A stretch of DNA of 52,247 nt from Octopus bimaculoides (Eukaryota). Below the pieces are notes generated by a model. It had not been told where the DNA came from. It did not search any database and was given only the letters and a program-made list of their open reading frames with translations. Below, one piece after another: positions 2,360 through 44,835 of the stretch. Numbering within the stretch: the first letter of the stretch is position 1; every line of letters begins with the position of its first letter. The stretch is taken from contig NC_068989.1 of assembly GCF_001194135.2 (NCBI RefSeq), forward strand, positions 32,110,044-32,162,290. The letters are read 5' to 3'. Made by a program: the position numbers and the translations under genes.

Positions 2360-2467
2360 ATGTCGAAGGCTAAGGCACAACAACCTGCTGTGATCCACAA
2401 AGTCATTATGGTTGGTAGTGGTGGTGTTGGCAAATCTGCCCTCACCCTACAATTTATGTATGATGAG
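2360..2467 (+). CDS. RAL: Ral GTPase, first coding exon ([36 protein letters not shown])
   Basis: Manual translation gives [14 protein letters not shown] (G1/P-loop) and [10 protein letters not shown], typical of Ral. Acceptor tttccAG at 2327-2328 gives a 31-nt UTR part; donor GTAAGT at 2468, phase 0. Confidence 0.97.
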
Positions 2468-9540: not shown

Positions 9541-9798
<258 letters not shown>

Positions 9799-10388: not shown

Positions 10389-10389
10389 T

Positions 10390-11172: not shown

Positions 11173-11174
11173 GT

Positions 11175-11544
11175 AATATATAATATATATATAATATACA
11201 TATATATATATATATAATATACATATATATATATATAATATATATAATATATATATATAATATACATATATATATATAATATACATATATATATATAATA
11301 TATAATATACATATATATATATATAATATACATATATATAATATATATATATAATATACATATATATATATAATACACATATATATAATATATATGTATA
11401 TATATAATATATATATATATAATATACATATATATAATATATATGTATACATATATATATAATATATAATATATATATATATAATATACATATATATATA
11501 TATATAATATATATGTATACATATAATTATATAATATATATATA

Positions 11545-11592
<48 letters not shown>

Positions 11593-11612
11593 ATATACAT
11601 ATATATATATAA
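11175..11612. repeat. Compound (TA)n/(TATAA)/(TACA) microsatellite
   Basis: Direct inspection. Confidence 0.95.
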
Positions 11613-11616
11613 TTTA

Positions 11617-12537: not shown

Positions 12538-13519
12538 ATTCCTTCCAGGCATGGTTATATACTTACACAGAAACACATGGGTGCAGAAGGTGGTCAACAA
12601 TGAAAATATCAGGTTGACGGAAATTACATTTCTTAATACGATGGGCAGAAAGTAAATAAGAAATTTGTATGGGAAATAAAGAATTGTATGCATTGAAGTG
12701 AAATTTGCCAGAGAGCCAGTTTTGAAGGAACAGGTAAAAAAAAAGCTGTTAATAACAGAAAAACACAAACCTGTTGCAAAAGTAAATAAGGAATTTTTAA
12801 GGAAATGAGCTAAGGATACAGATTTTTAGTGAAATTGTTTGAAGTTACTTCTGTCAGTAAATTATGAACTTACTTTTATCAGGAATTCTCTCAACAAAAA
12901 AAAAAAAAAAGCACAAAATGTTGCAGATGTAATTTAGAAATTTGTAGGAAAATTTAATGAAGTGTACGGATTGAAGTGAAATTTATGGAGTTACATCTGT
13001 CAGTAAATTATGTATGAAATTACTTTCATCAATAATTGTGAAATTCTTTCTAACAGTAATTTGTCATTGTTGTTTGTAAATAGCATTTGAAAACTTGCAG
13101 TGAAAACAATAGAGAATGAGTGAAGATATAGAGAGAGGGGAGAGAGAGAGAGCTAGCTAGTTGGACAAATAAGATAGATAGATAAGATATAGACAAATGG
13201 AGATAGAGGTGTACAGATAGATATAGAGATGGATAGAGATAGATGGATAGAGAGATATACATATCACTGACTCTAGAAAACCGGAAAAATATTTTAAACT
13301 CTCAATGATGTGAATCTAATATAAAAAGCAATATCTTAAATTTTTTTTTGATGAAGATAATCAACTTCTGAAAGTTACTTTGCAAAGAGTTACTTCCCTT
13401 CTACATGTAACCCAGGAATGGGTGTTTTCTGCCCCCCTGGGAGGACCGTTACTCTTTATGTAAAAATGCAGCTGTTATAATCTTTTACAGACACACACAC
13501 ACACACACACACACAGAAT

Positions 13520-13555
<36 letters not shown>

Positions 13556-13948
13556 NNNNNNNNNNNNNNNNNNNNNNNNNNNNNNNNNNNNNNNNNNNNN
13601 NNNNNNNNNNNNNNNNNNNNNNNNNNNNNNNNNNNNNNNNNNNNNNNNNNNNNNNNNNNNNNNNNNNNNNNNNNNNNNNNNNNNNNNNNNNNNNNNNNNN
13701 NNNNNNNNNNNNNNNNNNNNNNNNNNNNNNNNNNNNNNNNNNNNNNNNNNNNNNNNNNNNNNNNNTACGTATATATGCATATACTCATTTACTATTTGTT
13801 TATATATATATGTGTATCTAAATATATAGATAGATACTTATATATGTGAAACAGAGAGAGAGAGAGAGAGAGAGCGATGTCTAAGTGTCACTCACTCTCT
13901 CTCTCATGCATGTGCACATACATCCAAAATGATGTATATATATGTACT

Positions 13949-14103
13949 AGGAGTGGTTGTGTGGTAAGTAGCTTGCTTACCTACCACACGGTTCTGAGTT
14001 CAGTCCTACTTCGTGGCACCTTGAGCATGTGTCTTCTACTATAGCCTCAGGCTGACCAAAGCCTTGTGAGTGGGTTTGGTAGACAGAAACTGAAGGAAGC
14101 CCA
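13949..14103 (+). mobile_element. SINE head
   Basis: Same family as 7546-7708. Confidence 0.85.
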
Positions 14104-14893
14104 TTATATATNNNNNNNNNNNNNNNNNNNNNNNNNNNNNNNNNNNNNNNNNNNNNNNNNNNNNNNNNNNNNNNNNNNNNNNNNNNNNNNNNNNNNNNNN
14201 NNNNNNNNNNNNNNNNNNNNNNNNNNNNNNNNNNNNNNNNNNNNNNNNNNNNNNNNNNNNNNNNNNNNNNNNNNNNNNNNNNNNNNNNNNNNNNNNNNNN
14301 NNNNNNNNNNNNNNNNNNNNNNNNNNNNNNNNNNNNNNNNNNNNNNNNNNNNNNNNNNNNNNNNNNNNNNNNNNNNNNNNNNNNNNNNNNNNNNNNNNNN
14401 NNNNNNNNNNNNNNNNNNNNNNNNNNNNNNNNNNNNNNNNNNNNNNNNNNNNNNNNNNNNNNNNNNNNNNNNNNNNNNNNNNNNNNNNNNNNNNNNNNNN
14501 NNNNNNNNNNNNNNNNNNNNNNNNNNNNNNNNNNNNNNNNNNNNNNNNNNNNNNNNNNNNNNNNNNNNNNNNNNNNNNNNNNNNNNNNNNNNNNNNNNNN
14601 NNNNNNNNNNNNNNNNNNNNNNNNNNNNNNNNNNNNNNNNNNNNNNNNNNNNNNNNNNNNNNNNNNNNNNACCATATAAATAGTTATAAAAACTCCAATA
14701 TACATGCCTATGCATGTATACATTACCATATGCAGATATACATGGATACAAAAACATAACTACATGAGTACATATATGTGTGCTCAGATGCACATACACA
14801 GATGGTTGCACATGCATACTAAAATAGTCAACAGTCACTGTCACCACATGTGAGGGGGACATACACATATCTATCCCCTCACACATACATACA

Positions 14894-14926
<33 letters not shown>

Positions 14927-15089
14927 GTATATATAAATATTCCCATACATACATGATCCCTGGTATGAACGTTATTCGTTGCATTTCAAAAGCTGTTTAT
15001 ATGTTAAAATTTGTTGGGTGCGTGTGTGTCAGTTCTGTATGTGGTGGAGGGGTCTATGTGTAAATTATTTCTTGAGAAGTTGTTGATAC

Positions 15090-15119
<30 letters not shown>

Positions 15120-15120
<1 letters not shown>

Positions 15121-15616
15121 TGCCTCACTGTTAACGATGCCTCACTGTTAACAATGCCTCACTGTTAACAAAACAAAATACAAACCGGAATGGTCATCGA
15201 CCGTATTATAAAGGACCACGTACTCGAATGATGAACCAGATTCGAGACGAAAAATCTGCTACTGGTTCAAATCTTCCCGACACACAGGAGCTGGAAGTAC
15301 CCCACAACTGGAATATTCCAACAGATGGCCATCCATGCTCATCACCAAACAACCAAATGAAAAAGAATGAAAAATGGTCTAGGGAAGATAATAAAGAAGT
15401 TCTTATGGCCTTCTACCATGCCATATATTTCCCCACAAATAAATCGAATACTGTACAAACCTGTTTCTTAAACATTCTCTAGAACAACACTATGTACAAA
15501 TCGAAATATATGGTACCCTAGGCATAACACCTACATGAACTTCTAACTTGTTGTCTCTTGAGGTCTCTGGGTGAGACTTGGATCCAACTTGTACAAATGC
15601 AAAGCAAAAGTCAAAC
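15120..15616 (+). mobile_element. Putative internally deleted R4/Dong-like element embedded in (AAT)n
   Basis: Three 17-bp tandem repeats at the start; KWSREDNKEVLMAFY resembles an RLE-LINE N-terminus; flanked by (AAT)n on both sides. Family assignment is from memory, not from a search. Confidence 0.45.
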
Positions 15617-15647
15617 ATAAAATAATAATAATAACAACAACAATAAT

Positions 15648-15785
15648 AATATGCCAACTTTTTAAAATTTGTGATGAGGTACTCTGTTATTTTTTCCTAT
15701 GGAGAAGATAAGGTCCTTCCAGTAGTGGGTATTAAGAATTCTGCTGCTATTTGGGGAGGGGTAACTTTTACTGCTAATTCCTCTC
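15648..15785. repeat. Unclassified dispersed repeat (second copy about 50961-51070)
   Basis: Shared aataatatgccaa.ttt...ttctgctgctatt.gggga.gg.taa.tt.tac.g.taattcc, each next to (AAT/AAC)n. Confidence 0.7.
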
Positions 15786-15878
15786 ATCTAATTGGACATC
15801 TATTGTTTTAAATTATCTAGACTTAGCTATGGTTGGATAGCCACTAACCAGTCAAAAAGGTTAGGCGTGAATGCATAC

Positions 15879-15909
<31 letters not shown>

Positions 15910-17691
15910 TACATGCGTGCTTTATAAATTTATACACATATACACACATGTATATACACACATATATACACACATACACACACATACCTTCATGCCTGTA
16001 TATACTTATATAGATGGAGTGTACATACAAATACAAAGATTAAATGAGTTATAGAATAGATTATTATGAAGTCTATATGCGGATACAAATAAATAAATAA
16101 ATAAATATCCATATGTATGTATACATACATACATACACGGCCACACTATAATAAGGGGTAAAGTAGCAAGACAAAGCCATAATATATTAAAACTATAAGA
16201 CTGCTCATATTTCACTTCATGGTATGTTGGCGTTAAGTTAGATTATGCTTAAGAGTTTCTATGTCTGACAGCAAGATTCTCTTTATAGTAGAGTCACTCA
16301 ACTAATGAACCACTACGGCAGTTATTTATAAACTTAGCGATTTGCGTGTAATTATATTTCATTATTTCTACTGTTAGGTTTATACATGGGATGTCATTTA
16401 CTATAGAGACAAGAGTGAATGGGGGTGACCCTAAGATTTGAGTTTCCTACATAACTAACTGTTAACCTACATAATTAATTATTATTGTTGTTGTTGCTAC
16501 CACCATCACCATTATTATAATGTATCCTACATAACTAACTAATTAACCAATACATTAGTTCAAATGAGTAGATAAGTAAATAATAATTGACTAATCAAAC
16601 AATCGAGGAATAAAACTGTCCAAACCTTGGCAGAATATCGTTGAGTACCAGAGACCTTAGCACGTAGTAGACAGTTACCCACACATCCTCATATATACAC
16701 ACTCAAAATGTGCATACACACACACACATATATATAGGTGCATGTACACTTATCCACATACACACTCACACAACTACACACATACATACCTGCTTACCTA
16801 TACATATAAGTCAACCTACATATCCACATAACTGTATTCGCACAACATTATATACATGTACATGCAGGCATAAGATACATACTTAATTGTCAAATAAGCA
16901 CGCACATACATACATACATACATACATACATACATACCCAGATACAAGTGCATACCCACCTATAACTACATATATCTATACGTCCAGATGTAAATATCTA
17001 AATATATACATCTACAAGCACACGATATTCCCATAAATGATTGTAAATATATAGGTACACATATACCCACACACAGACATACATACATATATATATATAT
17101 ATACATATATATAGACCCATAGACACACCCATACACACATATATACACATACATATACATACACCCACATATACACACATACATATACTCATACATATAT
17201 ATGTACCCTCACATACACACACATATATACTAACAAATAAATACATAAATAAATACACACAGGTGGAGTATTTATAGTAATAATAACAACAATAACATTA
17301 ACAATAATAACACATGTAGATACATCCATATGTGCATATACATATGCACACACCTATACCTATAGATACTTATATCAATACAGAGGTAGTACTTACAGTG
17401 ATAACTACTCGCTTGTGTATGTATGCCAACATCAACATAAATATATCAAACTAAATATATATACTTATTTATATATGTCGACTTAATTATTATATGTTAG
17501 CTAATACAATGTCAGTAAACTCTCATTAGTTATCATTAAAACAGATGTGGTGCTTTAGTACTAGGTTCTATATTTATATTAGATATATATATATACAGAT
17601 ATCACATTTAATCTCATACAATATTGGATAGAAATAGTGGTTAGCTTAAATAAATTCTATTACATCAGGGATGGTATCTTAATATTACGTT

Positions 17692-18780
17692 CTACTTGAA
17701 TTTAGAGAAGGTATACCCAATTTTATAAAGGCATGAATGGTTGCGTTCCTTCAGATTGTTAATAAGCGGAATTTTGGCCCTAATTAGGAAAAAAATTTCA
17801 TTTATGCATAATAAGCATTTTCTATTTTTATTATTGTATGCAGGTGCAGATGTCAATATTTCCCAGTTTAGGTTAAAGTTAGTACCCTTATATTTGAGTT
17901 CCCATATGTAGCTACTTAATCCGGTAGAATTTCTTCTGTTCCTGTTCCTAAACGTATAATTGTGGTAATTAAGTCTTTGTTTCATACTATTTTTAGTCGC
18001 ACCCACGTATACCCTATTATCATATTTTGTATTTACTACACATTGGTATACTACCTCCTTTCTCATGCAGCTATTTCCGAGCACGCAATTTTTACTTATT
18101 CTACAATTACAATTTTTACTTTGGTGCACATAGTTAATGTGATTGGTGTTAAAATTTGCCATGCTATTTATTCGGTTATTGTTGATCCCCAAGACGCTGT
18201 TATTGCTAATACTATTGTTATTATCAATGTTAGTATTCCTACTACTATTATTATTATTATTAATACTTCCATTGTTACTTGTACTATTATTATTATTACT
18301 ATTATTTTTATTGTTTATGTTAATGTTATTGTTTCCAGAATCAATATTAATATCATCATTACCATTACTATAATTATTATTATGACTATCATTGTTGCTA
18401 TATATGTTTGTGTTGTCTGTGTTATTTTTCCTACTCATATAGAAACTAACCAGCTTTCTGTTGTTAATTGAGGAGATTATGGTAGCCAGGTTGTGCATTA
18501 GGCTATATCCTATTCTTACTGTTATATTATTAATTAACTCCCAATATTTATTTTTTCCTTTTACAAATTGTTTATTGATTATACTGAAGATTGTTTTTAC
18601 TATGTCATTTTTGATCTGCATGGCAAAGGGGATTATTAGCCACAGAGTGTCTACCCCATTATTGTCTTTATAAGGGTTGCCTACATTATGTGTGGATCTT
18701 CCGGTATTATTCATATTTCTAATATTGTATTTAATATTATTCTTTATGTAACCGTTTTTGTTGCTGTTATTCTCTTGAAG
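17692..18780 (-). mobile_element. Penelope-like element C-terminus: linker + CxCx5Cx5C + GIY-YIG endonuclease, with an in-frame Asn microsatellite
   Basis: ORF 17692-18954: WLIIPF...VRIGYSLMHNLATIISSINN, then CNCRISKNCVLGNSC, VVYQC..YVGATKNSMKQRLNYH, GLSSYIWELK, WEIL, CLLCINE. Confidence 0.88.
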
Positions 18781-18814
<34 letters not shown>

Positions 18815-18819
<5 letters not shown>

Positions 18820-19017
18820 CTGTGTTTGTCCCCCCACCATCGCTTGACAACCGATTTTGGTGTGTTTACGTCCGTGTAACTTAGCATTCGGCAAAAGACT
18901 GATAGAATAAGTACTAGGCTTACAAAGAATAAGTCCTAGGATGAATTTCTTCAACTAAAGGCGATACTCCAGCATGGCCACAGTCAAATGACTGAAGCAA
19001 ATAAAAGAATAAAAGAA
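18815..19017 (+). mobile_element. SINE 3' module
   Basis: Matches 8230-8438 and the reverse complement of 49287-49500. Confidence 0.85.
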
Positions 19018-23223: not shown

Positions 23224-23398
23224 GGAACAAATTCTAAGAGTTAAAAATGATGACAATATTCCATTCCTACTAGTTGGCAACAAAGCTGATCTTGAAGACA
23301 AGCGTCAAGTCAGTGCAGATGAAGCTAGTCAGAGAGCTGTCCAGTGGAATGTGTCTTATGTAGAAACTTCAGCTAAAACTAGGGCTAATGTTGATAAG
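23224..23398 (+). CDS. RAL: Ral GTPase, third coding exon (175 nt; G4, G5)
   Basis: (R)[58 protein letters not shown], with NKAD and ETSAK motifs. Polypyrimidine tract + CAG at 23221-23223; phase matches the previous exon; donor GTATGA at 23399, phase 0. Confidence 0.98.
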
Positions 23399-23759
23399 GT
23401 ATGAATTGTTGATTAATTATTGGCCTTTGTGTTTGAATATTGTTGGATATATTGCTTTTACAGATGGATTCCCTTCAAGCTACTAATCATTCAAGTCTGT
23501 AGTCTATCACTACAACCACAATTATTAATTTTTACTCAAGTTTTTATATTGGTGATCCATAGCAACCTGTAGGGTGTTCACAGGGTGATTAGCTCTGCTT
23601 GTATGATTAACGTTATCAAACCAGAATTTTTTCATAATTGATGTACGCTTTCTTATAAGCTCTGTAGAGCTTTACTCTGCTTTCCTTAGAGTTGCCCTTC
23701 TGTTTAGTTGTATCTAAATTGTCTTATCAGATTTTACCACTGTGGGATGTGTTGGGACT

Positions 23760-27165: not shown

Positions 27166-27341
27166 TTATTTGTTTCTTTGAATATTCTAATGTCTTTTAA
27201 GTCCTAATGTATAATTATGGGAATATAAGTTTGAGGCTGTTGCATAATTTATGTAGTTAACCATTACCATTGTTTTAACATTGTCTTTTTAGCCAAATCA
27301 TTAATGCACTATTACGTAAATTATTCTTTTTCTTTTTCCAG

Positions 27342-27482
27342 GTGTTTTATAATCTTTTATCATTAAGCCAGAAATGGAAACAGTCTGTTGGCTCTTCTCA
27401 GACCCAACATGCCAATATTTCTGTGGGAAATTCAAGCCACAGAAAGGGCACCAAACATAAAAAGAAATGTACTATTCTGTGA
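27342..27482 (+). CDS. RAL: Ral alternative terminal exon A (proximal): VFYNLLSLSQKWKQSVGSSQTQHANISVGNSSHRKGTKHKKKCTIL*
   Basis: Strong acceptor ttattctttttctttttccAG|G. Phase-0 frame is open for 46 codons, starts with VFY like the canonical exon and ends in a basic patch + CaaX (CTIL) + TGA. Predicted protein 210 aa. Confidence 0.85.
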   Translation: MFYNLLSLSQKWKQSVGSSQTQHANISVGNSSHRKGTKHKKKCTIL

Positions 27483-27548
27483 TTTTTGTAGCTAGCTTTA
27501 GCCTTCTTAAATCCTCCAAGTAATTCTTAAAAAATGTGCAAGATATCT

Positions 27549-27554
27549 AATAAA
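27549..27554 (+). promoter_or_regulatory. Candidate poly(A) signal for the exon-A isoform
   Basis: AATAAA 67 nt after the exon-A stop, followed by a T-rich tract. AATAAA is common by chance in this AT-rich DNA. Confidence 0.3.
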
Positions 27555-28551
27555 TTTCCTTTTCCTTGTTTTTCTTTCCCTAATTTATTTTGCTTTAATT
27601 CATCTCAGTTTTTATCTTCCACTCCTTATGCTCTTACTCTTACAATTTAAATTATTTTTGGTGAACCATTTTTTGTAATTAGTTTCAGTGTTAATTTTTG
27701 TAATGTAAGGTACAGCATGGGCTAAATACATTTCTGTATTTAGTTCCCCTAACTTGTTTCCAAGCTAAAATTCTATCAAAAGTCACTTAATACTCAGTAT
27801 TCTTTGGGCTGAAAAAAAAGTGTATATAATGTACTTAAGTTAAAATAATTGGCTTTGATACTTTTCTTTACAAAGTTACATAGTAAAACATCCTCCACCT
27901 CTAAAATATGAAAATTTATCCCCATTAGAGACAAAAGATTCAGAATGTATATCCATGAAAAACAGGGCTACACATTTTGTCCAATGTACTACCAATTCTG
28001 CCAATGCATGCACACTCTCATACACACACACACACACATGAAAAAAGAAAACTGGTATATTTTTAGAATTTTTCAAAAATTGGTATATTTTGCTATTAAA
28101 AAAATTTATTGTTAGCAATTTAACCTCTCAAAAAAAAAAAAAGAAAAAAAAAACAGTCCAATATTTTAGTTTCCTGGATTTTAAGCCAATGTCTCTACTA
28201 TGTAGACTTTTGATCTAATTTAATGTCAACATTGAATTTCTCTTCTTTCAGAGGTAGAATTGCTTCAAAATTTGGCAAGCTGCTTGTGTTTCTTAGTTTT
28301 GATTGTTGATAACTCATTTAATACTCATACTTTTGAAAAAGAAATGAGCATTGTGCAATCTCATATCTACATTTCTATAAATATGAGGTTTTTTGGTTAA
28401 AGATTCCATATTTTTGATTTGTGAGTGTACAACTATAACAAAATGTCTAATTAATGAATACATAGCTCTAAGAATATATACCAGGTCCATGAGCTGGTTT
28501 CAATTGGCTGTTAACTATTTAACACCACTTTTTCCTTCCCAGTGAACTTGA

Positions 28552-28800
28552 CTCTAGCAGGCATAGCTATGCAGTTAAGAAGCTTGCTTCCCAACCATGT
28601 AGACTTGGGTTCAGTCTCACTGTGTGGCAACTTGGGTAAGTGTCATCTAGTGATATTGCTCATTTCCAGTCTTCCTTTAGGGAGTATTAACTTGCTTGGA
28701 AACAAATGGAGATTGGCTGCAGGAAGGGCATCTGGTTGTAGAAAATCTGATTCAGAAACTACTGTTTGGCTCCTGCAAGCATAGAAAAGCACACAATGCA
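28552..28800 (+). mobile_element. Degenerate SINE (tRNA head + RTE-like tail) between the two terminal exons
   Basis: gcttgcttcccaaccatg..gggttcagtc..gtggcaacttgggtaagtgtc and caggaagggcatc..gtagaaaatctg. Confidence 0.7.
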
Positions 28801-28806
28801 AACATG

Positions 28807-28847
<41 letters not shown>

Positions 28848-29827
28848 TGGATAATAGAGGAGTTCTTTAGTACATTACTTACCTTGACTGAAATCTTGCT
28901 TAACCTTGTTAAATTATAATCCTACTCTTGATTCTGGAATGTGGAATTGGAGAGCACTTTTGGCTTTATAAAAACCACCCAAGCCTCTAATTTAAATCTG
29001 TCACAAATATCACACACACACATCTTTGCTGAATAGTGTGGGAATTTGTTGATGATGTCAATTTAATTACATCAGAATATTAATGATGGTACAACTGCAG
29101 CTGACAAATCAATAGGGTTACACTACTGACAAGATGCAGTGTCTGTATATATGGAGGTTCAGAGCCCCATTCCAGATTGCAATATGTCTTTGCCAAACAC
29201 ATAATGCATGTTCAGTTTATTCAGAGGTACATAAATATTAGAAGTTGTAAGAAATAAGCACACTACAATTATTTTATTAGCTTTATAGTGTTGACTCCAG
29301 TTATCCTAAAGTCCTGTTGAAGTTGGTAGTAATCACTTTGTATCCTTCCTTTTGAAATTTCTTTTGATTTTTCACCTTTACTTGCTGAAGACACTTTCAC
29401 AAGTGTACTTATTTTTGGTGGAGCAATAACTAAACTTTTATGCCATATCAATGAAGAAAATCATTTCTGATATTCTGGTTATGTGGATATAGTTATAGCT
29501 GGACCATGCTACCACTAATATCACAATCAGCCAAATCTTGGGTAGTTTGTTTGAAAATAAGTAGCTTTACTTCGCAACTATTATGGCTGGTAAATAATCC
29601 ACTAATTTTTCTTGTAACTCTATAAATAGCAATGCCCAACCTGTGGATGGAAAAAAAAGTTAAAAATAGGTATAAAAACATAGTAAAATATAAGAATTAA
29701 CAAATTTTCAGATTGTTGCTCTTGAGCCTGTTTTCTCATTTTCTCCCTTTTTTCACTTAACCTGAATTCATTTGCTACCTTTTTTTGTTGCTTTTCCCAA
29801 TCAATTCTCCTTCACTTTTGCTTGTAG

Positions 29828-29941
29828 GTATTTTATGATTTGATGAGAGAAATCAGTTCTCGGAAAATGGCTGCCAGTCGACAAAATAATGGCAAGAAGC
29901 ACAATGGAGACCGACGCAAGAAGAAGTGTATAATTCTTTAA
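29828..29941 (+). CDS. RAL: Ral alternative terminal exon B (distal, canonical-like): VFYDLMREISSRKMAASRQNNGKKHNGDRRKKKCIIL*
   Basis: Acceptor ttcacttttgcttgtAG|G. VFYDLMREI..RKM resembles vertebrate RalA VFFDLMREIRARKM. Polybasic RRKKK + CaaX (CIIL) + TAA. Predicted protein 201 aa. Confidence 0.95.
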   Translation, partial: VFYDLMREISSRKMAASRQNNGKKHNGDRRKKKCIIL

Positions 29942-30326: not shown

Positions 30327-32264
30327 CTTTTTTATGCAACATAGAGACTTAATCTCTCTCTCTCTCAGTGGAACACTAAGCACACTCACTGCTGAATCTG
30401 ACATTTCTTTCTTTTTTAAATAAAATTTAAGACTTCTTGTTGTGTTGGAAGATAAAGCCATTGATTTATATGAATAATAAAGTGGCAGCAATAATTATAT
30501 TACCAATAATTATAAGGTTCAAACCAGGCAACTAATAATGAGGAAATGAAAAGTGGAGAAAAGACTCAGTTCCTGCAGAAATTTCGATTCTAGCAGTGTG
30601 TGTTTGTGTGAAATTATACTATCTCTGTTAGGGGCAGGTAATAGGATGGTATTATTGACACTGAAGATGTTGTGAGGAGTGGGGAACTCTTACTCATAAC
30701 AGGTGTGGAGAGAAGTTCTGTTAATTATCTGTAACTTAGAGGGAAAAGTGGCTTAAATTCTGTTATTTTGAAGCTCATCAATTTCAAATTTGTTGTACCC
30801 TAATAGCTTTTGATTTCAGACCAGACATTCATTTGTTAAACATTTTTTCTTCAGTAAGAGTAAATTCCCTCCTTCCACAATCTTAGTCATTTGATAAGTA
30901 AAAATGTTTTCAATAGCACCTGATTAATATATTGTTGTTGAAATAATAAATAACTTGGCCAGTTCTGTGATGAGACACTATTTAACTTTGAATGATAGTG
31001 ATACATTTTGCTGCTAGCATTTGAAATTCTTCTGGAGTATTGGAAATTGCTACTCAATGTTTGCATCTCTTCCAAGTCCATTCAGTGAGTTGATGGCAAA
31101 ATATCATATACTTGATTTGTTTTCCTTTTGAGTAAATATAGAATAAAAGAATGCATTGAAATTTATGCTATTTGATGATGTTTTGTGATGTTTGCTAACC
31201 ATCTCTAAGATCTAAAAAGATGTATTATTTTTCTTGTTTCTAATAATTGTGGTTGTAGAAGCTCAAAGTGATAATATAAATAATTATGTGAGAAAGAATT
31301 TTGAAAATAAGTGAAACAATTGCCATCATACAAGTTGACTGGCCATTTGATATGCAAGATATATTAAAAGTGAAAATTAAATCAAATTAACAAAATAAAG
31401 TATGATAAAAGAGAATTAATTTGACTGAGAAATCTCTGCCTTCATCTCAATCTCCTTAATAAAAAAATGTTTAAATCCCTCATTTTGTAGATTTTCATTG
31501 CAGCATTTACTTGTTTAACATTTAAATGAAGTTGGATGTTTTCATATGGACCATATACTATACGAAATTTTTGTTTACATTCCTTGTTTTCTACAAAATC
31601 TTCTTTTAAGAAAAAAATACTATCTGAAATCTGTGAATGCATATCTTGTTTATTACTATGAGGTGATGGAGGTATGATTCTATCATTACATCAATTCTAT
31701 TAGCTGTCTTTTACAATATTTCTATTTGTCTTTTAAAACTTTCTATACACCTTTTTTTTTTTACCATACTTTCACTCAACATACACATTTATTTATTTAC
31801 TGATTGCTAGTTATCAATCCAAAATCTTCATGTGAGTACTTGCAGCCCATTGTTTATCGAAAAAGTTTAAGTGTGTTTGTGTTGTGATTCTATTGAAATC
31901 CTGAAGCTGTACATAAACTAAGCATAGACTGCAAAATTTTTTCAATTCTATGTATTTAAGGTTTACTTAATTGCTCATTTAGCATTACTTATCCAGTCTT
32001 ACTAAAAATAACTCCTGATCAGCCACAATAAATGAACTTCTAGTAACAATTTCTTGGCATAGTCTTATTTTTTAATGTTTTTTTCTCTAGCCTTATCAGA
32101 ACTTTTTTGTTTTTAAAGTCTTGAGACATTCAGCTATTTGTTTTCCAGGCGAACAGAATTTCATTTTGTGTCTATATAGCAAAATAGAATTTCATAGAGA
32201 TGATAAAACACATCATACCAAATACGTTGTCCGCATATGCATGAGTGTGTGTGCGCACACACAC

Positions 32265-32265
<1 letters not shown>

Positions 32266-32363
<98 letters not shown>
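32266..32363. repeat. (CT)n microsatellite
   Basis: Direct inspection. Confidence 0.95.
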
Positions 32364-33189
32364 TTGGATAGTTGATGTCAGACATGATCCTAATACCATT
32401 TTGTGTTCAATCATTATTGTAAGCAGGTTTCAACATAGTCTTGAACAATTATCAATTATCAGTCAGAAAACTGGTCGAAGGGAAGCAATAATTGTCTGAT
32501 CAGATTATGTAGTTGAGAGTGGGAAAAGGACTTATTGTGCAGAATAATGACTAGTCAGTTTTTGGTGTGCATGTGTACTTAATACTTTTTATTTTCGTTT
32601 GTTTTAAAAATGATATTAAAGCTTGAACAAGATGAACTGCTTTTAATTTTGGCATTAGTTTACTGCGTTCTTAGTCACTAACCCTTTTAAAAACAGAATA
32701 TTTATTTTTTTGTCATAATATTTTTGTCTCAATATAACCTTGGAAGCTTGGCTATTCTTTGCCTACCTATTTCCATATATTTGTGTAAATACCTTTCACT
32801 CAGCTTTTCTTCACCTTAGCTCTTTGCTCATGACTAATTTGACTCTATTTTCTCTCTTTTCATTGTCCATCCATCTATCCATCTCTTTTTCTTCCCCTCT
32901 GTCTCTCTTACCTTTTTTCTTTTTTTTAAACCATAACTTAAAATGATTTTTTTGAGGCTTTATATCTGACCAGTCCTAAAAGTATGAAATGGCATTATAG
33001 TCAGAAATTTATGCATTTTTAAAATTTCAAATATAATAAACATTGCAATGGAGTGATAACTATTTTGACTTTTGTGTTTCTTGAATCGTTTAAGTTAAGT
33101 TTTTAAAATATAGCATTCTGTTTCTGCTAATTGGCAGAATTATTAGAGCATCAGACAAATTGTTACACAGTAGTTAGTTATGGACTTTT

Positions 33190-37617: not shown

Positions 37618-38590
37618 TGTATGTATTCAGTCTTATTTAAACATTTCTTGCCAATAGAGAAAGAACTGGTTTCTAACCTTGACCTAAGGCTCCTTCATTG
37701 AAATTTCAACATCAGGAGGGTATTTTTGCCTGTATGTGTGTATATGTGCAGATTTGTATGTTTTGCTTTATGTATTCTTATGCATATGGTTGCCTGTTTA
37801 GACATGTGCATGTATACTTAAATGATAAACTTCCGGAAAGTTTTACAGTTCCAGTGCTGGCTAGGATCTGTAGTCTTTGAATCAGCTTTCTCCTTTTAGG
37901 TTTTGAGAAGCCTGATTTCTTAAGAGTGGTATTTACTCAGTGTTACATATCCCAGTAACCCCATAATTACAGGTACAAACCTGGACTTGTAATCTGGGTA
38001 GAGTAACTCGATTTGTCAATAGTTCAGCAAAGGTATTTTCCTTTTCACTGACATTTAGCTGCATATTCACATCTGCTGGGCAGCTGATTTCTACTACAGG
38101 ACACAGTTTCTCATCTTTGTTCCAAATCATTATATCAGGTCTATTATGTTTACATTTTACTGAGGTTTTCACTGACACATTCTATCATTCTTATTATGAG
38201 TGGTTATGGCCTCTTCTATACTGTGGGCTTTTATTCCTTAGGCCTTAGGGTTACCATTTTGAAGGATCTCATAGTGCAGTGCCCTGGCTACAGCACCATG
38301 TCTTGTAGTTAGATAATACTCATGACATTTTTGAACAACTGCTTATGATGTAGGTGATGTCTTCAGTGTCAACTCCACAAAGTCTGCTTCGCTTATCACA
38401 TTTTGGTGCTTCCCCTGCATCTTTGTCCCTTTTGTGCATCAGATATTTCGTTGATATTTCTTGTTCTGGGATTGCAAACACACAACCTTCAAAGTGAAAG
38501 TTAGTAGTCTAGTTGTTGGTCCATGATAGATGGCTTTGATTATCATTGTTACTATCATCCTGGATCTTTCTGCTAACATATCTATGCATG
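37618..38590 (-). mobile_element. R4/Dong-like (RLE) LINE 3' fragment: Zn knuckle + PD-(D/E)xK-type nuclease + 3' UTR
   Basis: RLCGVDTEDITYIISSC; KHNRPDIMIWNKDEKLCPVVEISCP; homologous over its whole length to 46325-47295. Confidence 0.85.
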
Positions 38591-38609
38591 TTTTATGTAT
38601 GTATTATGG

Positions 38610-39390
38610 ATTTGCATTTATCTTCGCTAACCGACCCCTCCCCTCCTTCAAATGAGCCCACAACCTACGAGACCTCTTGTTCCACAGCTTCTTCCCTAAC
38701 CCACACTCCCAACCCAGCTCGTTCCCCTGCTCCTTCCCACGCTGCCACATTTGCCTATACCTCTCCAGCACCACCCTCCTCACCAGCACCCATCATCGAC
38801 CCTATCATATCACCGACTCCTCCATCTGCACTTCTAACAATGTCATCTACTGCATCCCTTGCTCTCTTTGCCCTTTTCTATACATCGGGCAAGCAGGACA
38901 CCACTTGGCTGACTGGTTTGCGGAACACCTCTGAGACATCTGACTCGGCACACCCCACCCTTGCTTTCCCCACTCTCCTCTCACCTATATCACAACACCA
39001 CCAAACAACACACTACCAAACAACACACCACCATACCACACAACACAATATCACATCACACCACCACTCACACACTAGCACTGACCACTTCCCAGCACCC
39101 ACACCATCATCCGCACGCCTACACATGCACACGTCAAGCTCACCAGCCCTCTTCTACATGCACATACATGATCTCTTATACACACATACGCGCACCTTCG
39201 TTATGGGATCACCACTACTTTATCTCCCCTTCCTAGCTCTCTAGATCGCGAGCAACTACACATTCTTTATTTTCTCACCCTGTTTCTTTCTGTGTTCATT
39301 TCTATGATAGAGCGTAGGCTTGAAATGTTAAAGACTTTTTCACTTCCCAAGCATTAGACTAATACATCTGTTTGTTGTCTACACCACCTG
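38610..39390 (+). mobile_element. Penelope-like element 3' end (Neptune-like Cys linker + GIY-YIG) with a terminal hammerhead remnant
   Basis: PLPSFK*AHNLRDLL; CSFPRCHIC; CTSNNVIYCIPCSLCPFLYIGQ..FAEHL; GAGC-GTAG-GCTT-GAAA at 39310-39325. Confidence 0.82.
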
Positions 39391-39414
39391 TTTTTTTTTT
39401 TTTTTGTGAATTCT

Positions 39415-39417
<3 letters not shown>

Positions 39418-39455
<38 letters not shown>

Positions 39456-39691
39456 CATAAATATACATATGTATATGTATATATATATATGTATATATAT
39501 CTATATATATACACATAAATATACATATGTATATGTATATATATGCGTATATATATGAGTATATATATGTATACATGTATATATATATACATATATATAT
39601 ATACATGCATATGTGTATGTATATATATATATATATACATGTATATATATACATATATATATATGTACATATATATATATATACATGTATA
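39418..39691. repeat. Compound (TA)n/(TACA)n microsatellite
   Basis: Direct inspection. Confidence 0.95.
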
Positions 39692-39790
39692 NNNNNNNNN
39701 NNNNNNNNNNNNNNNNNNNNNNNNNNNNNNNNNNNNNNNNNNNNNNNNNNNNNNNNNNNNNNNNNNNNNNNNNNNNNNNNNNNNNNNNNN

Positions 39791-41285
39791 NAAAGCAATT
39801 AAGAGTATGAAGACAGGGAAAGCCTCCGGCCCATCAGGAATGACTGCAGAGATGCTCAAAATATCTAGCAGTGTTGGCTATATCCTAGTCACCCGTATAG
39901 TTAACCAGGTGATACAAGAAGGAGTCATACCCAATGACTGGTGTAGCACCATCATAGTCAACTGCTATAAAGGTAAAGGTGACGCTTTAGATACAAATAA
40001 TTACAGAGGTATCAAGTTGTTGAATCAGGTAATGAAAGTCACGGAGAGGGTCATAGCCCAACTAATTAGGGAGAGTGTCAATTTAGATGAGATGCAGTTT
40101 GGGTTTGTGCCAGGGAAATGCACCACTGATACTATATTTCTGGTAAGACAGCTGCAGGAGAAATACCTAGCCAAAGATAAACCTCTGTACTTGGCTTTCG
40201 TTGACATGGAGAAAGCCTTTGACAGGGTCCCCCATCCCTTACCTGGTGGTCAATGAGGAAACTAGGGATAGAAGAATGGTTAGTGAGAGCTGTGTGAGCC
40301 ATGTACAGAGACGCTGTCAGTAAGGTGAGGGTTGGCAACGAGTACAGTGAAGAATTCCGGGTAGATGTAGGGGTCCACCAAGGTTCAGTCCTCAGCTCCC
40401 TCCTATTTATCATAATCCTCCAGGCAATAACACAGGAATTCAAGACAGGAAGCCCCAGGGAGCTCCTCTATGATGATGACATTGCACTAATTGCTTTGTC
40501 ACTATCAGAACTAGAGAAGTTTCAGGTGTGGAAGCAAGGACTACAATCGAAGAGCCTTAGAGTCAACCTAGCTAAAACCAAAGTCCTAATAAGTACGAAG
40601 GTAGACAAAACACAAACCCCTTCAGGTAGATGGCCCTGCTCAATCTGTAGAAAAGGCGTAGGTAGAAACTCCATAAGATGTATCCAGTGAAAGCTATGGA
40701 CACAAAAGAGGTGCAGCAATATCAAAGGAAGGTTAACTAGGAATTTAGTTTTTGTATGTGGCAGACGTTCAGGAGCAAAAAGCACTGAAAATCTGCAGAA
40801 AACAACTTCTGCCACATTCCATAGAGAAAAACTAGTCGTAGTTGATAGCTTCCGCTATCTAGGTGACCAAGTTAGTAGTGGGGGAGGGTGCGCTGAAAGT
40901 GTGGCTGCTAGAATAAGAATAGCCTGGGCAAAGTTCAGAGAGCTCTTACCTCTGCTGGTGACAAGGGGCCTCTCACTCAGAGTAAAAGGCAGACTGTATG
41001 ATGCATGTGTACGAACAGCCATGCTTCAAGGCAGTGAAACATGGGCCGTGACTGCTGAGAACATGCGTAAGCTCGCAAGGAATGAAGCCAGTGTGCTCTG
41101 CTGGATGTGTAATGTCAGTGTGCATACTCGACAGAGTGTAAGTACCTTGAGAGAAAAGTTGAACCTAAGAAGCATCAGTTGTGGTGCACAAGAGAGACGA
41201 TTGCGCTGGTATGATTATGTGGCAAGAATGGATGAGGATAGCTGTGTGAAAAAGTGTCACACACTAGTGGTTGAGAGAACCTGTG
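39791..41285 (+). mobile_element. RTE-clade LINE, RT domain and downstream region (stops/frameshifts)
   Basis: KTGKASGPSG..NYRGIKLL..QFGFVPGK..LAFVDMEKAFDRVP; GVHQGSVLSSLLF; LLYDDDIAL; KGRLYDACVRTAML.GSETW. Confidence 0.95.
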
Positions 41286-41886
41286 GAATTAAATACNNNN
41301 NNNNNNNNNNNNNNNNNNNNNNNNNNNNNNNNNNNNNNNNNNNNNNNNNNNNNNNNNNNNNNNNNNNNNNNNNNNNNNNNNNNNNNNNNNNNNNNNNNNN
41401 NNNNNNNNNNNNNNNNNNNNNNNNNNNNNNNNNNNNNNNNNNNNNNNNNNNNNNNNNNNNNNNNNNNNNNNNNNNNNNNNNNNNNNNNNNNNNNNNNNNN
41501 NNNNNNNNNNNNNNNNNNNNNNNNNNNNNNNNNNNNNNNNNNNNNNNNNNNNNNNNNNNNNNNNNNNNNNNNNNNNNNNNNNNNNNNNNNNNNNNNNNNN
41601 NNNNNNNNNNNNNNNNNNNNNNNNNNNNNNNNNNNNNNNNNNNNNNNNNNNNNNNNNNNNNNNNNNNNNNNNNNNNNNNNNNNNNNNNNNNNNNNNNNNN
41701 NNNNNNNNNNNNNNNNNNNNNNNNNNNNNNNNNNNNNNNNNNNNNNNNNNNNNNNNNNNNNNNNNNNNNNNNNNNNNNNNNNNNNNNNNNNNNNNNNNNN
41801 NNNNNNNNNNNNNNNNNNNNNNNNNNNNNNNNNNNNNNNNNNNNNNNNNNNNNNNNNNNNNNNNNNNNNNNNNNNNNNNNNNNNNN

Positions 41887-44835
41887 NCCTGCTGCTAATG
41901 AGAAAGAAAAATATAAGGAGTTTGAAAACAAGAGGTATGTCAAGCTCTTTATAAAATGACAGGCTCTACAGTGGAGAAACTGGGAAAATTAACAAGCTCA
42001 ATTTACGATACAAGGAAGGAATTGTTTGGAATGAAAGAGAACATCTGATTAGCGAAAGGAAAGTGTAGACCAAACAGGAGGATCAGGAAAATGAAACAGT
42101 TGAGGAAGGAAAAGACCAGCCTAAGAAAGCGGTGGAAATGTGCTGCAGAAGATGACAAACCTGGCCTCGCACTGCTGTATAACGATTTGAAAAGGAAATG
42201 TCGTTATGTGCAACGACATCTCCGCCGATATGAGCATCGAAAGGAAAGTAAAAGGACTCGGGGGCAGTTTCTGAAGGACCCATACATGTTTACTAAGAAG
42301 CTGTTCACTGAACCTAAGAGTGGCACATAATCATGCACGAAAGAAGAATTGGATGCTCATGTCAATGAAACCTACAGTGATCCACACCGTAACCAGCCAC
42401 TGCCACCTCTACATGGGCTAAAGCATCTCTTAGAAATTGATATCAAATTCCAAATTGAGGACATCAGGGAGAAAGAGGTGAATGATTTCGTAAGAAAAGC
42501 CAGAGCAAAAAGTGCCCCAGGCAGTGATGGCATCTCGTATAAAGTTTACAAATATTGCAATCGTCTGCGAAAGAAACTCTTTGTCCTACTCCGACAGCTG
42601 TGGTACAAAGAGACTCTAGTAGAGGATTGGTGTGAGGCAGAAGGTATATACCTGCCGAAGGAGGCCAATGCAGAGACTATAAAACAGTTTAGGCTGATAT
42701 CCTTATTCAATGTGGAAGGCATATTTACAGAGTAATGGAAATGTTGATGAATCTGTTCAAAAGGTCAGAATCCCTGGGATCCCTGGATGTGTTGAACACT
42801 GTTTTTCAATTTGGAAAATGATCCAGAATGCCAAAGAGAACAAGAGAAGTCTGAATGTGATATGGCTTGACCTAGCTAATGCATATGGCTCAGTGTCACA
42901 CGAATTACTAATGAGAGCCATGGACCACTTCCACATTCCAGACAAAGTGACCAAAATAATGAGGATGTGTTATAACAGTTTTGAGATGAGGTTTACAGCT
43001 GGAGATTTTACAACAGATTGGCACCGATTGGAGAGTGGCATTGCTGCTGGCTATACAATATCTGTCACATGGTTTATCTTAGTCGTGGAGATGATTTTCA
43101 AAGCCGTGGATTTTTCAGAACAAATCGCTCATGTACAATCGCCTAAGAAAGCCTTCATGGATGACGTGACACTTCTATCTACAGACAAGCAAATCATGCA
43201 GAATGCCCTCTTGAAACTAGACAAACTTGTGAGGTGGTCAAGGATGCGGTTTAGAGCAGAAAGTCACGTAGTCTGACATTTGTTAAGGGAGTGCAGAAAG
43301 AATTAAAATTTCAAATAGCTGAAGAAAGCATTCCAACAGTTAAAAAAGAATCTGTCAAAAGCTTGGGGCAAGTATATACTGGAACATAATCAGATAGAAG
43401 TCACGGGATGGAAATTATGAAACAAGCCGAGGCTGGATTATCAGCGATTGATAACTCAAAGTTACCAGGTAACTATAAAATTTGGTGCTTGCAGTTCGGT
43501 TTGTTCCCGCGACTTTCGTGGCCACTTCTAATATATGAGGTAGCCTTGTCATGAGTTCAGATCATTGAACAAAAATGTAATGTGTTCATTAGAAAGTGGC
43601 TAGGCCTACCTCGGATGTTGAACAGTTCAGCTCTTCATCGTAAAAGAGGTTCGTTGCAGTTACCACTAGCGTCAATAGTCGAAATATACAAACTAGGGAA
43701 GATACGGACGGTGATGATGCTGAGAGAATCAAAGGATACGGAAATCAGGCATAACCCACCAGAGGTGAAAACAGCCAGGAAGTGGAAAGCAGAAGCAGAG
43801 ACTGATGACATCTTGTCTTCTCTTATACACAGAGATATGGTGGGTGCAACACAGAACCATCGGAGAGGACTTGGTTTTGGCGCAAATCAGTTCAGACCGT
43901 TTGCAAGTATGATGCAGAGCGAACGCAGATCTGCTGTTAGCAACAGCGTCAAAACAAGAGAAGCAGAGAGAAGAGAGCTTCATTTGATCCGATGTAGTCA
44001 ACAAGGACAGATGACGAGATGGGAGGAACATGTTATTGAGAGAAAAATAAGTTGGAATGAGATATGGAGGTGGACCACATCTTGGCTAAGTTTTCTGATT
44101 TGTTCATTCTATGGTGTTTCGCCATCACCTACAAATTTAGTAAGTCTCAGAGAATGATATATGCAAATGCGGAAAGGTTGGAACACTGAAACATATTCTT
44201 TCCAACTGTTCATTAGCATTGAACAGGCATACATGGAGACACAGCCTGGTCCTTAAGGTTATCTTCAATGCTATAAAAAACCAAATTGATCTCAACAACA
44301 GTGAGAAAAACTGTTGAAAGTACCAACTAGAGATTTTATTACCTTTGTGCGCTCAGGACAGCGGATCCGTTTCAAGAAGAACAACAACAATCTTCCTGCG
44401 AGCGATGAAAAGTGGAACAGCTATTGGGAGGTGACTGCAGATTTATCAGGGTGCCAGGGACTCTCTTTCATCCCAGTTACAAAAAAAAAAAACCCCGGAC
44501 ATTTTAATGTGGTGTGAAGGAAAGAAAGTTGTGAATCTAGTCAAGTTAATGGTTCCTCATGAAGATAACATGGACACCGTTTGGGCTCAAAAGATTGACC
44601 GTTATGTAAACCTCCTTGAAGAATGTGAAGATGCAGGCTGGAAAGCAGAGCATTTTCCAATCGAAGTTGGATGTAGATGGTTTGTTGGACACAGTGTGAG
44701 ATGAATGTTGTTATCGTTAGGCCTAAATCATCATAAAGTAAATACCACCATGACTGATATCCAAACTACAGTGAAGAAGGCTAGCCACTGGATTTGGTTA
44801 AAAAGAGATGATGAGCGATGGCTAGAGGAATATTG
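41887..44835 (+). mobile_element. Hero-like (R2 superfamily, RLE) non-LTR retrotransposon, decayed; 5' end hidden by a gap
   Basis: FLKDPYMFTKKLF; KARAKSAPGSDG; WLDLANAYGSVSH; KAFMDDV; CKCGKVGTLKHILSNC..RHTWRH; LMVPHED..IEVGCR..KASHWIWLKR. Confidence 0.88.

What the first reader, a model, noticed from the sequence alone, without database searches (positions are those of the whole stretch)
27342..29941. Ral gene with two alternative CaaX-encoding terminal exons (KRAS4A/4B-like architecture)
Seen: after the phase-0 donor at 23399 there are two separate phase-0 acceptors. Each opens with V-F-Y and closes with basic residues + CaaX + stop (exon A ...KGTKHKKKCTIL*, 46 aa; exon B ...GDRRKKKCIIL*, 37 aa). 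A chance intronic frame with this start, end and acceptor is very unlikely. Established: KRAS and CDC42 diversify membrane targeting through alternative last exons, whereas vertebrates diversify Ral tails through two paralogues (RALA/RALB). Inference: this lineage makes two Ral proteins from one locus by tandem duplication of the last exon. I am not aware of this being described for molluscan Ral, but I cannot search.
Basis: partly seen in the sequence, partly recalled or inferred. Interest (0 to 1): 0.85.

Follow-up and report, generated by a model that had tools for sequence, protein, structure and literature searches.

The report
Octopus Ral gene, two alternative tails
The octopus Ral GTPase gene really does carry two alternative last exons, each encoding its own membrane-anchor tail, but both isoforms are already in RefSeq and the same layout occurs across molluscs, a brachiopod and a nemertean, so it is an old shared feature rather than an octopus invention.

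Summary
After the phase-0 donor at 23399, two AG-preceded phase-0 exons each encode VFY…polybasic-CaaX-stop: A at 27342-27482 and B at 29828-29941. This signature occurs exactly twice in the window and in none of 200 shuffles.

The window is Octopus bimaculoides. The two spliced products match RefSeq XP_014789607.1 (isoform X1, tail A) and XP_014789608.1 (X2, tail B) exactly.

Exon A is intact in O. vulgaris, O. sinensis and Argonauta hians. Between Octopus and Argonauta it is one of only three alignable islands around the last introns, with dN/dS about 0.4. An AATAAA follows its stop in all three genomes.

The order "exon 3, alternative exon, canonical exon" is present in genomic DNA of oyster, abalone, chiton and Lingula. 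Alternative-tail isoforms with identical G-domains are annotated in 11 species.

So the duplication is probably ancient, not octopus-specific. Both octopus tails are polybasic with CaaL, so the KRAS4A/4B contrast in lipid anchors does not apply here, though it does in most other molluscs.

I could not test RNA junction use directly. I found no paper describing this.

The parts
2360..2467 (+). Ral coding exon 1 (ATG at 2360; [36 protein letters not shown]; donor gtaagt). The exon probably starts at 2329 after ...tttccag. In the N-terminally extended isoforms, 2329-2359 is read as ..[10 protein letters not shown].
   Evidence: tblastn with human RalA and manual splice-site reading; O. sinensis and Argonauta extended isoforms P0018/P0017
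9589..9797 (+). Ral coding exon 2 ([13 protein letters not shown]...ATAEF, switch I/II region); ends in phase 2 (CG|G)
23224..23398 (+). Ral coding exon 3 (..[24 protein letters not shown]...[12 protein letters not shown]); phase-0 donor GT at 23399-23400. Read-through gives V then a stop (gta tga).
   Evidence: 100% protein identity in O. vulgaris and Argonauta
27313..27341 (+). Polypyrimidine tract and AG acceptor of exon A; conserved with Argonauta together with the exon
   Evidence: the alignable island spans 27313-27491
27342..27482 (+). Alternative terminal coding exon A: 46 codons plus TGA. It encodes the alpha5 region, a Ser/Gln/Asn-rich linker, HRKGTKHKKK and the CaaX box CTIL.
   Evidence: Exact match to XP_014789607.1. 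Orthologues in O. vulgaris (1 aa change) and Argonauta (67% aa identity, in-frame 1-codon indel, CVIL). dN/dS 0.395.
27549..27554 (+). AATAAA 67 nt after the exon A stop: candidate polyadenylation signal for a short 3' UTR specific to exon A
   Evidence: same offset in O. vulgaris; AATAAA 46 nt after the stop in Argonauta, in sequence that is otherwise unalignable
29828..29941 (+). Canonical terminal coding exon B: 37 codons plus TAA; VFYDLMREI alpha5, polybasic RRKKK, CaaX box CIIL
   Evidence: Exact match to XP_014789608.1/XP_052826522.1. 100% aa identity in O. vulgaris and Argonauta with 13 synonymous changes.

Best explanation
The window holds the single Ral small-GTPase gene of Octopus bimaculoides.

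Shown:
- After exon 3, which carries all nucleotide-binding and effector motifs, the pre-mRNA can be joined to either of two homologous terminal coding exons.
- The distal exon B gives the canonical 201-aa Ral. It has a VFYDLMREI alpha5 helix and a short basic linker, and ends RRKKK-CIIL.
- The proximal exon A gives a 210-aa Ral. Its G-domain is identical up to VDK164. Its alpha5 is strongly diverged (VFYNLLSLSQKWK), followed by a longer Ser/Gln/Asn-rich linker and the tail HRKGTKHKKK-CTIL.
- Exon A is conserved under moderate purifying selection across octopods.

Inferred:
- Exon A is used as an alternative last exon with its own nearby polyadenylation signal, as in CDC42 E6/E7, rather than as a KRAS 4A-type cassette.
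- Both tails are geranylgeranylated (X = Leu) and use a polybasic second signal. The isoforms would therefore differ not in the type of lipid anchor but in the alpha5 surface and the linker.
- That difference includes a conserved basophilic [RK]KG[ST]K site six residues before the Cys, present in tail A and absent from tail B. It could act as a phospho-electrostatic switch like RalA S194 or KRAS4B S181.
- Exon A is most likely the octopod version of an old alternative Ral tail exon shared by molluscs, brachiopods and nemerteans.
For: Anatomy and frames.

Chance excluded: (2 hits in the window, 0 in 200 shuffles).

Identity to annotated isoforms: XP_014789607.1 carries tail A and XP_014789608.1 carries tail B; O. 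sinensis XP_036362298.1 carries tail A; O. sinensis X1, 228 aa, tail A.

Conservation:
- The Argonauta exon A is open, with a polypyrimidine tract, an AG acceptor and CVIL.
- In window 22-33 kb only exon 3, exon A (27313-27491, 75% nt identity) and exon B align collinearly to Argonauta.
- For exon A, Nei-Gojobori counts are 22 non-synonymous and 12 synonymous changes, omega 0.395, Fisher p = 0.03. The only indel is in frame.

Polyadenylation: AATAAA lies 46-67 nt after the stop in three octopods.

Wider distribution:
- Exon order exon 3, alternative exon, canonical exon is seen in DNA of C. virginica, H. cracherodii, Liolophura and Lingula.
- Eleven species have isoforms with identical cores and different tails.

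Shared signature with the alternative-tail class: Leu at tail position 6 in 14/17 alternative tails against 0/88 canonical tails. There is a K-aromatic-K motif at positions 11-13, as in gastropods, where canonical tails have S-R-K. HMM scores favour the alternative-tail class by 2-7 bits.
Against: No RNA evidence could be examined here. The only support for use of the 23398-to-27342 junction is the existence of Gnomon models in two Octopus species.

The O. vulgaris annotation members seen include B-tail products and a truncated one, but no A-tail product.

Tail A lacks residues that are invariant or nearly so in all other Ral tails: D4, R7 and a hydrophobic residue at position 9. Its alpha5 may therefore pack differently. 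The AlphaFold model was too poor to judge this (pLDDT 45.7).

Sequence support for orthology with the alternative exons of other molluscs is weak, because the tails are short and evolve fast.

Decapodiform and nautiloid genomes could not be checked.
Confidence: 0.8

Rival explanations
1. Octopod-specific origin. Exon A arose by tandem duplication of exon B within cephalopods, independently of the alternative tail exons of bivalves, gastropods, chitons and Lingula. Its resemblance to them would be convergence.
For: - Octopod tail A is very divergent from every other tail. It lacks D4, R7 and [MI]9, which the other alternative tails keep.
- Its anchor (single Cys, polybasic, X=L) looks like the canonical tail B, not like the CC/CxC alternative tails.
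- The HMM preference for the alternative-tail class is only 2-7 bits.
- An upstream position is expected half the time by chance.
Against: - An alternative exon sits at the same place in all four molluscan classes sampled and in a brachiopod. A single origin is therefore more parsimonious.
- A and B share only the VFY start and the KKKC.IL end, at about 32% identity. Exon B is 100% conserved between Octopus and Argonauta, which implies that the A/B split long predates octopods.
- L6 and the K-aromatic-K motif are alternative-class signatures.
Confidence: 0.25
2. Exon A is a KRAS 4A-type cassette exon rather than a true last exon. It would be spliced on to exon B, which then serves as 3' UTR.
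For: This is how KRAS4A mRNA is built (my knowledge; PMC9882654 describes alternative use of exons 4A and 4B). A weak GT (ttg|gtagct) lies just after the exon A stop.
Against: That GT is a poor donor and is not conserved in Argonauta. A canonical AATAAA lies 46-67 nt after the stop in all three octopods.
Confidence: 0.15
3. Exon A is a non-functional relic or an annotation artefact: a decaying duplicate that is never, or only noisily, spliced.
For: No RNA data were examined here. omega of 0.4 is much higher than for exon B (0). Core alpha5 residues are lost. There is no A-tail product among the O. vulgaris annotation members seen.
Against: - The frame, acceptor, CaaX box and polybasic run are retained at dS about 0.6 from Argonauta, with an in-frame indel, while the flanking intron is unalignable.
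- Blocks such as SQKWK, VGSS, QHAN and KG[ST]K are identical.
- Gnomon models exist independently in two species.
Confidence: 0.05

Closest known systems
CDC42 alternative last exons (E7 ubiquitous ...CVLL versus E6 brain ...CCIF)
   Same: A single small-GTPase gene has two homologous terminal exons. Both start inside alpha5 in the same phase. Each encodes the hypervariable region, a CaaX box and a stop, and each probably has its own 3' UTR and poly(A) site. [quoted passage not shown] Most molluscan Ral alternative tails (CC or CxC, few basic residues) mirror the CDC42 contrast between polybasic and dual-Cys tails.
   Different: It is a different GTPase subfamily (Ral). In octopus both tails are single-Cys, polybasic, X=Leu, so the palmitoyl/polybasic contrast is absent. 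Tissue specificity is unknown.
KRAS4A/KRAS4B
   Same: The proximal alternative exon lies upstream of the canonical polybasic exon. The G-domain is identical, and the isoforms differ from alpha5 onward. Both exons are conserved over long evolutionary time.
   Different: KRAS exon 4A came from NRAS exon 4 inserted in jawed vertebrates (PMC9882654) and is a cassette exon with 4B as UTR (my knowledge). Ral exon A looks like a true last exon. The intron lies four codons further 3' than in KRAS (after VDK; my knowledge of KRAS codon 150/151). There is no palmitoylatable Cys in octopus tail A, and both tails end in Leu (geranylgeranyl rather than farnesyl).
Vertebrate RALA/RALB paralogues
   Same: Two Ral proteins with nearly identical G-domains differ mainly in the C-terminal hypervariable region. 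That region controls localisation and phospho-regulation (RalA S194, RalB S198; my knowledge).
   Different: Vertebrates achieve this with two genes from whole-genome duplication, whereas this is one gene with alternative exons. The field describes invertebrates as having 'a single Ral protein' (bioRxiv 10.1101/2025.08.28.672893).
Annotated alternative-tail Ral isoforms of other lophotrochozoans (for example Crassostrea virginica X1/X2/X3, Haliotis cracherodii X1/X2, Tubulanus polymorphus X2/X3)
   Same: Same gene, same intron, same exon order and identical cores. The alternative tails share FYxLL and K at position 13. The gastropod tails share the K-aromatic-K motif with octopus.
   Different: Octopod tail A has lost D4, R7 and [MI]9, and has a canonical-like polybasic CaaL anchor. 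Oysters have a third alternative exon that is absent from octopods.

Membership tests
Ral subfamily of Ras-like small GTPases | Full G-domain with Ral-type sequence and close identity to RalA/RalB | tested here: met
   tblastn with human RalA gives 77-94% identity over exons 1-3. phmmer against the PDB gives RalA 2BOV at E = 2e-94. Precomputed PF00071 Ras is recorded on the orthologues.
Ral subfamily of Ras-like small GTPases | C-terminal CaaX box ending in Leu (a geranylgeranyl acceptor) preceded by basic residues | tested here: met
   Tail A ends KHKKKCTIL and tail B ends RRKKKCIIL. Actual prenylation is not testable with these tools.
Small-GTPase loci with alternative tail exons (KRAS4A/4B, CDC42 E6/E7) | Two homologous exons in tandem after one donor, in the same phase, each encoding alpha5, the hypervariable region, CaaX and a stop | tested here: met
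Small-GTPase loci with alternative tail exons (KRAS4A/4B, CDC42 E6/E7) | Both exons are actually used in mature mRNA, mutually exclusively at the protein level | not testable with these tools
   Indirect support only: the RefSeq Gnomon isoforms X1/X2 in O. bimaculoides and X1/X3 versus X2 in O. sinensis. For another mollusc-like animal, spliced Logan transcripts carry an alternative tail (P0012, six runs).
Small-GTPase loci with alternative tail exons (KRAS4A/4B, CDC42 E6/E7) | The two tails carry different second membrane-targeting signals (palmitoylatable Cys versus polybasic) | tested here: not met
   Octopus tails A and B both have a single Cys, 4-5 K/R in the six residues before it, and X=L. 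The feature is met at sequence level in 12 of 17 alternative tails of other species (CC or CxC, 0-2 basic residues).
Small-GTPase loci with alternative tail exons (KRAS4A/4B, CDC42 E6/E7) | Both exons conserved across species under purifying selection | tested here: met
   Between Octopus and Argonauta, exon B has omega 0 and exon A has omega 0.395. Both are alignable islands in unalignable intron.
Pan-molluscan / lophotrochozoan alternative Ral tail exon | Located between exon 3 and the canonical exon | tested here: met
   The octopods, oyster, abalone, chiton and Lingula loci all show this order. A hemichordate locus has no such exon.
Pan-molluscan / lophotrochozoan alternative Ral tail exon | Sequence orthology of octopod exon A to that exon class | tested here: inconclusive
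   L6 and the K-aromatic-K motif are shared. Mean BLOSUM score is 25.9 against 18.6, and the HMM gives 16.4 against 8.9 bits. However, D4, R7 and [MI]9 are lost and the margins are small.

The most novel reading that the evidence does not exclude
The alternative Ral tail exon is a single ancient invention of the lophotrochozoan ancestor, retained for more than 500 million years in molluscs, brachiopods and nemerteans. 'Single-Ral' invertebrates would then have made two or three differently anchored Ral proteins all along, a splicing-based counterpart of the vertebrate RalA/RalB split. Octopods would have remodelled their copy into a second polybasic geranylgeranyl tail with a conserved [RK]KG[ST]K phospho-switch and a rebuilt alpha5 surface.
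Probability: 0.5. Interest if true: 0.55.

Novelty: new member of a known kind. Interest (0 to 1): 0.4.

Why it matters
Ral tails decide where the GTPase sits and which kinases regulate it. Vertebrates split these roles between RalA and RalB. The invertebrate literature treats Ral as a single protein.

Public gene models and the genomic DNA examined here show that many lophotrochozoans produce two or three tail variants from one gene. This adds Ral to the short list of small GTPases (KRAS, CDC42) that diversify membrane targeting by alternative tail exons. A survey of the human RAS superfamily did not list Ral among them.

For octopus biology it flags a conserved, unstudied Ral isoform. It is not a new principle, however, and the isoforms are already in RefSeq.

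Tried and rejected
- A tail-A-only profile search of the 5.8-billion protein set found nothing. The index holds 90% cluster representatives, and isoform A is hidden under a B-type representative. It says nothing about distribution.
- The Sepia pharaonis locus could not be fetched because the gene range is too long. Exon A therefore could not be dated in decapodiforms or Nautilus.
- Look-ups for Mya X2, Tubulanus X2 and Owenia returned 'not on record'.
- The AlphaFold2 model of isoform A from a 40-sequence alignment was poor: mean pLDDT 45.7, with a helix at 163-180 at only 52-66. It was not used as evidence, and no fold search was run on it.
- A third octopod tail exon like the oyster ...TTKCCVLM exon was looked for and not found.
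- An alternative exon was looked for in a hemichordate (Glandiceps) and not found. One species gives no firm conclusion for deuterostomes.
- Five literature searches, including one for the RefSeq accessions, found no paper describing alternative Ral tail exons.
- I considered chance open frames and rejected them. I also considered a pseudo-exon and rejected it.
Full report
**Observation**

- Exon 3 of a Ral gene (23224-23398) ends ...[12 protein letters not shown], followed by a GT donor at 23399 in phase 0.
- At 27342 an AG preceded by a long pyrimidine run opens a frame reading VFYNLLSLSQKWKQSVGSSQTQHANISVGNSSHRKGTKHKKKCTIL and then a stop (27482).
- At 29828 a second AG opens VFYDLMREISSRKMAASRQNNGKKHNGDRRKKKCIIL and then a stop (29941).
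- A tblastn with human RalA places the other coding exons at 2360-2467 and 9589-9797. Joining exons 1-3 to A gives 210 aa and to B gives 201 aa.
- I defined a composite signature: AG acceptor, [VAITCG][FY][FY]xL[LM], an open frame, a basic cluster, then CaaX and a stop. It occurs only at these two places on either strand of the 52-kb window, and in none of 200 composition-preserving shuffles. Chance is excluded.

**Identity and prior annotation**

An exact-sequence look-up shows the window is Octopus bimaculoides. Both proteins are already public:

- The 210-aa product is XP_014789607.1, 'Ral-A-like isoform X1'.
- The 201-aa product is XP_014789608.1 / XP_052826522.1, 'isoform X2'.
- O. sinensis XP_036362298.1 (X3) and a 228-aa X1 carry tail A with one substitution.

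I could not inspect RNA evidence. Support for junction use is therefore indirect. The O. vulgaris annotation members I saw contain B-tail products and a 165-aa read-through product, but no A-tail product.

**Conservation of exon A**

I fetched the orthologous loci of O. vulgaris (L001) and Argonauta hians (L002).

- Exon A lies between exon 3 and exon B in both.
- In Argonauta it reads AFYSLLSMSQKWKQRVGSSHVQHANASASGSNHKKGSKQKKCVIL*. It follows ...ttctcttctatcttccag, and its only indel relative to Octopus is one codon, in frame.
- Between O. bimaculoides and Argonauta, the only collinear non-repeat alignments in window 22-33 kb are exon 3 (92%), exon A with its acceptor (27313-27491, 75%) and exon B (85%). 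The introns are otherwise unalignable.
- Nei-Gojobori counts for exon A are 22 non-synonymous and 12 synonymous differences, omega 0.395 (Fisher p = 0.03). Exon B and exon 3 have 13-14 synonymous and 0 non-synonymous differences.

Exon A is therefore a constrained coding exon, though much less constrained than exon B.

**How it is probably processed**

A canonical AATAAA lies 67 nt after the exon A stop in both Octopus genomes. In Argonauta it lies 46 nt after the stop, in sequence that no longer aligns. There is no conserved donor after the stop.

I infer that exon A is a true alternative last exon with a short 3' UTR of its own, as in CDC42 E6/E7. It does not look like a KRAS 4A-type cassette. 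This is inference, not shown.

**Not an octopus invention**

A full-length search returned many RefSeq 'isoform X1/X2/X3' Ral proteins. I extracted the sequence after ...VDK from each.

- In eleven species the isoforms have identical cores from HKVIMVG to VDK but different tails: two octopuses, Haliotis, Mya, three oysters, Physella, Pomacea, Babylonia and the nemertean Tubulanus.
- Genomic DNA confirms the same order (exon 3, alternative exon, canonical exon) in Crassostrea virginica, which has two alternative exons plus the canonical one, and in Haliotis cracherodii.
- The same order holds, from alternative exons I found by scanning, in the chiton Liolophura (AFYDLLKSMKTSK...HHCILL*) and the brachiopod Lingula (AFFLLLAITRDKK...KKKKKKKCILM*). 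Both have good acceptors.
- Six Logan transcript contigs from another animal carry a spliced alternative-tail Ral.
- A hemichordate locus has no such exon.

**Is octopod exon A the same exon as these?**

Canonical tails are extremely uniform: VF[YF]DLMR[EA]IRxRK, a single Cys, about 4 basic residues before it, and X=L in 82 of 88.

Alternative tails have Leu at position 6 in 14 of 17, against 0 of 88 canonical tails. They never have Arg at position 12, and gastropods have K-[FY]-K at positions 11-13.

Octopod tail A has L6 and K-W-K. It scores higher against the alternative class than against the canonical class. BLOSUM means are 25.9 against 18.6, and HMM scores are 16.4 against 8.9 bits for Octopus and 18.5 against 16.6 for Argonauta.

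The margins are small. Octopod A has also lost D4, R7 and the hydrophobic residue at position 9, all of which the other tails keep.

Exon B is 100% identical between Octopus and Argonauta while A and B share only about 32%. The A/B split is therefore far older than octopods. I rate a single ancient origin at about 0.5-0.6 and an independent cephalopod duplication at about 0.25.

**What the two proteins differ in**

Both octopus tails end in CaaL with a single Cys and a polybasic run. By the established CaaX rules, both should be geranylgeranylated and use an electrostatic second signal. The defining KRAS4A/4B or CDC42 contrast, a palmitoylatable Cys against a polybasic run, is therefore not met in octopus. 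It is met at sequence level in 12 of 17 alternative tails of other species (CC or CxC with 0-2 basic residues, and X = L/M/Q/A).

The octopus isoforms differ in the alpha5 helix surface and in the linker. Tail A is 9 residues longer, has no acidic residues and is rich in Ser/Gln/Asn. It has a conserved basophilic site six residues before the Cys: HRKGTK in Octopus and HKKGSK in Argonauta. Tail B has no Ser or Thr in its last 20 residues.

My hypothesis, which is inference only, is that tail A is a phospho-regulated version of the anchor, by analogy with RalA S194 and KRAS4B S181.

The PDB comparison shows that isoform A aligns to RalA only up to about residue 172. An AlphaFold model was too poor to assess alpha5 packing.

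**Comparison with the literature**

A study of RAS tail evolution surveyed all 167 human RAS-superfamily genes. It lists KRAS, CDC42 and eight others with C-terminal alternative splicing, not RAL. It states that only CDC42 behaves like KRAS (PMC9882654).

A 2025 Ral paper states that invertebrates signal 'to a single Ral protein', and it describes only N-terminal isoforms in C. elegans.

Five searches, including one for the accessions, found no description of alternative Ral tail exons.

**Verdict**

The feature is real and the architecture claim is correct. It is a new member (Ral) of a known kind (alternative tail exons in small GTPases). It is already present in public annotation, and it is widespread rather than lineage-specific. 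Interest is moderate.

Noticed in passing
window 23396-23404: Read-through of the exon 3 donor gives ...VDK-V-stop (gta tga). A 165-aa product ending this way, with no alpha5 and no CaaX, is annotated in O. vulgaris (CAI9728261.1, P0008). It may reflect intron retention or intronic polyadenylation.
   Followed up: partly
window 2329-2359: The 5' part of the first coding exon is open upstream of the ATG (..[10 protein letters not shown]). It is read as protein in N-terminally extended isoforms of O. sinensis/O. vulgaris (219 and 228 aa) and Argonauta (218 aa). These start in an exon upstream of this window.
   Followed up: partly
window 39543-40256 and 42710-43276 (+): Two ORF fragments match Pfam RVT_1 reverse transcriptase (E = 4e-11 and 1e-13). 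This looks like a broken retrotransposon downstream of the Ral gene. Neighbouring long ORFs at 38546-44157 have no Pfam hit.
   Followed up: partly
window 10609-18954 (-): Several long ORFs (250-420 aa) lie on the minus strand inside Ral intron 2 and have no Pfam match. They may be a degenerate mobile element.
   Followed up: partly
window 28813-28844 and 32262-32368: (CT)n microsatellites lie in the exon A-exon B intron and in the 3' region. They caused many spurious cross-species blastn hits.
   Followed up: no
L009 (Crassostrea virginica) 15531-15695, 16984-17085, 18074-18187: Oysters have three alternative Ral tail exons in a row: ...GCCQLL, ...TTKCCVLM and the polybasic ...KKRKCTIL. These match RefSeq isoforms X1, X3 and X2.
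   Followed up: yes
L012 (Liolophura sinensis) about 12376-12534: There is an alternative Ral tail exon (AFYDLLKSMKTSKRS...HGHHCILL*) with a good acceptor. It is not reflected in the single chiton protein retrieved (P0061), so it is apparently unannotated.
   Followed up: partly
L013 (Lingula anatina) 8516-12225 versus 12401-16049: A tandem duplication of about 3.7 kb (88-92% identical) includes Ral exon 3, so exon 3 occurs twice (10348-10524 and 14183-14359). It could be a real duplication or uncollapsed haplotypes.
   Followed up: partly
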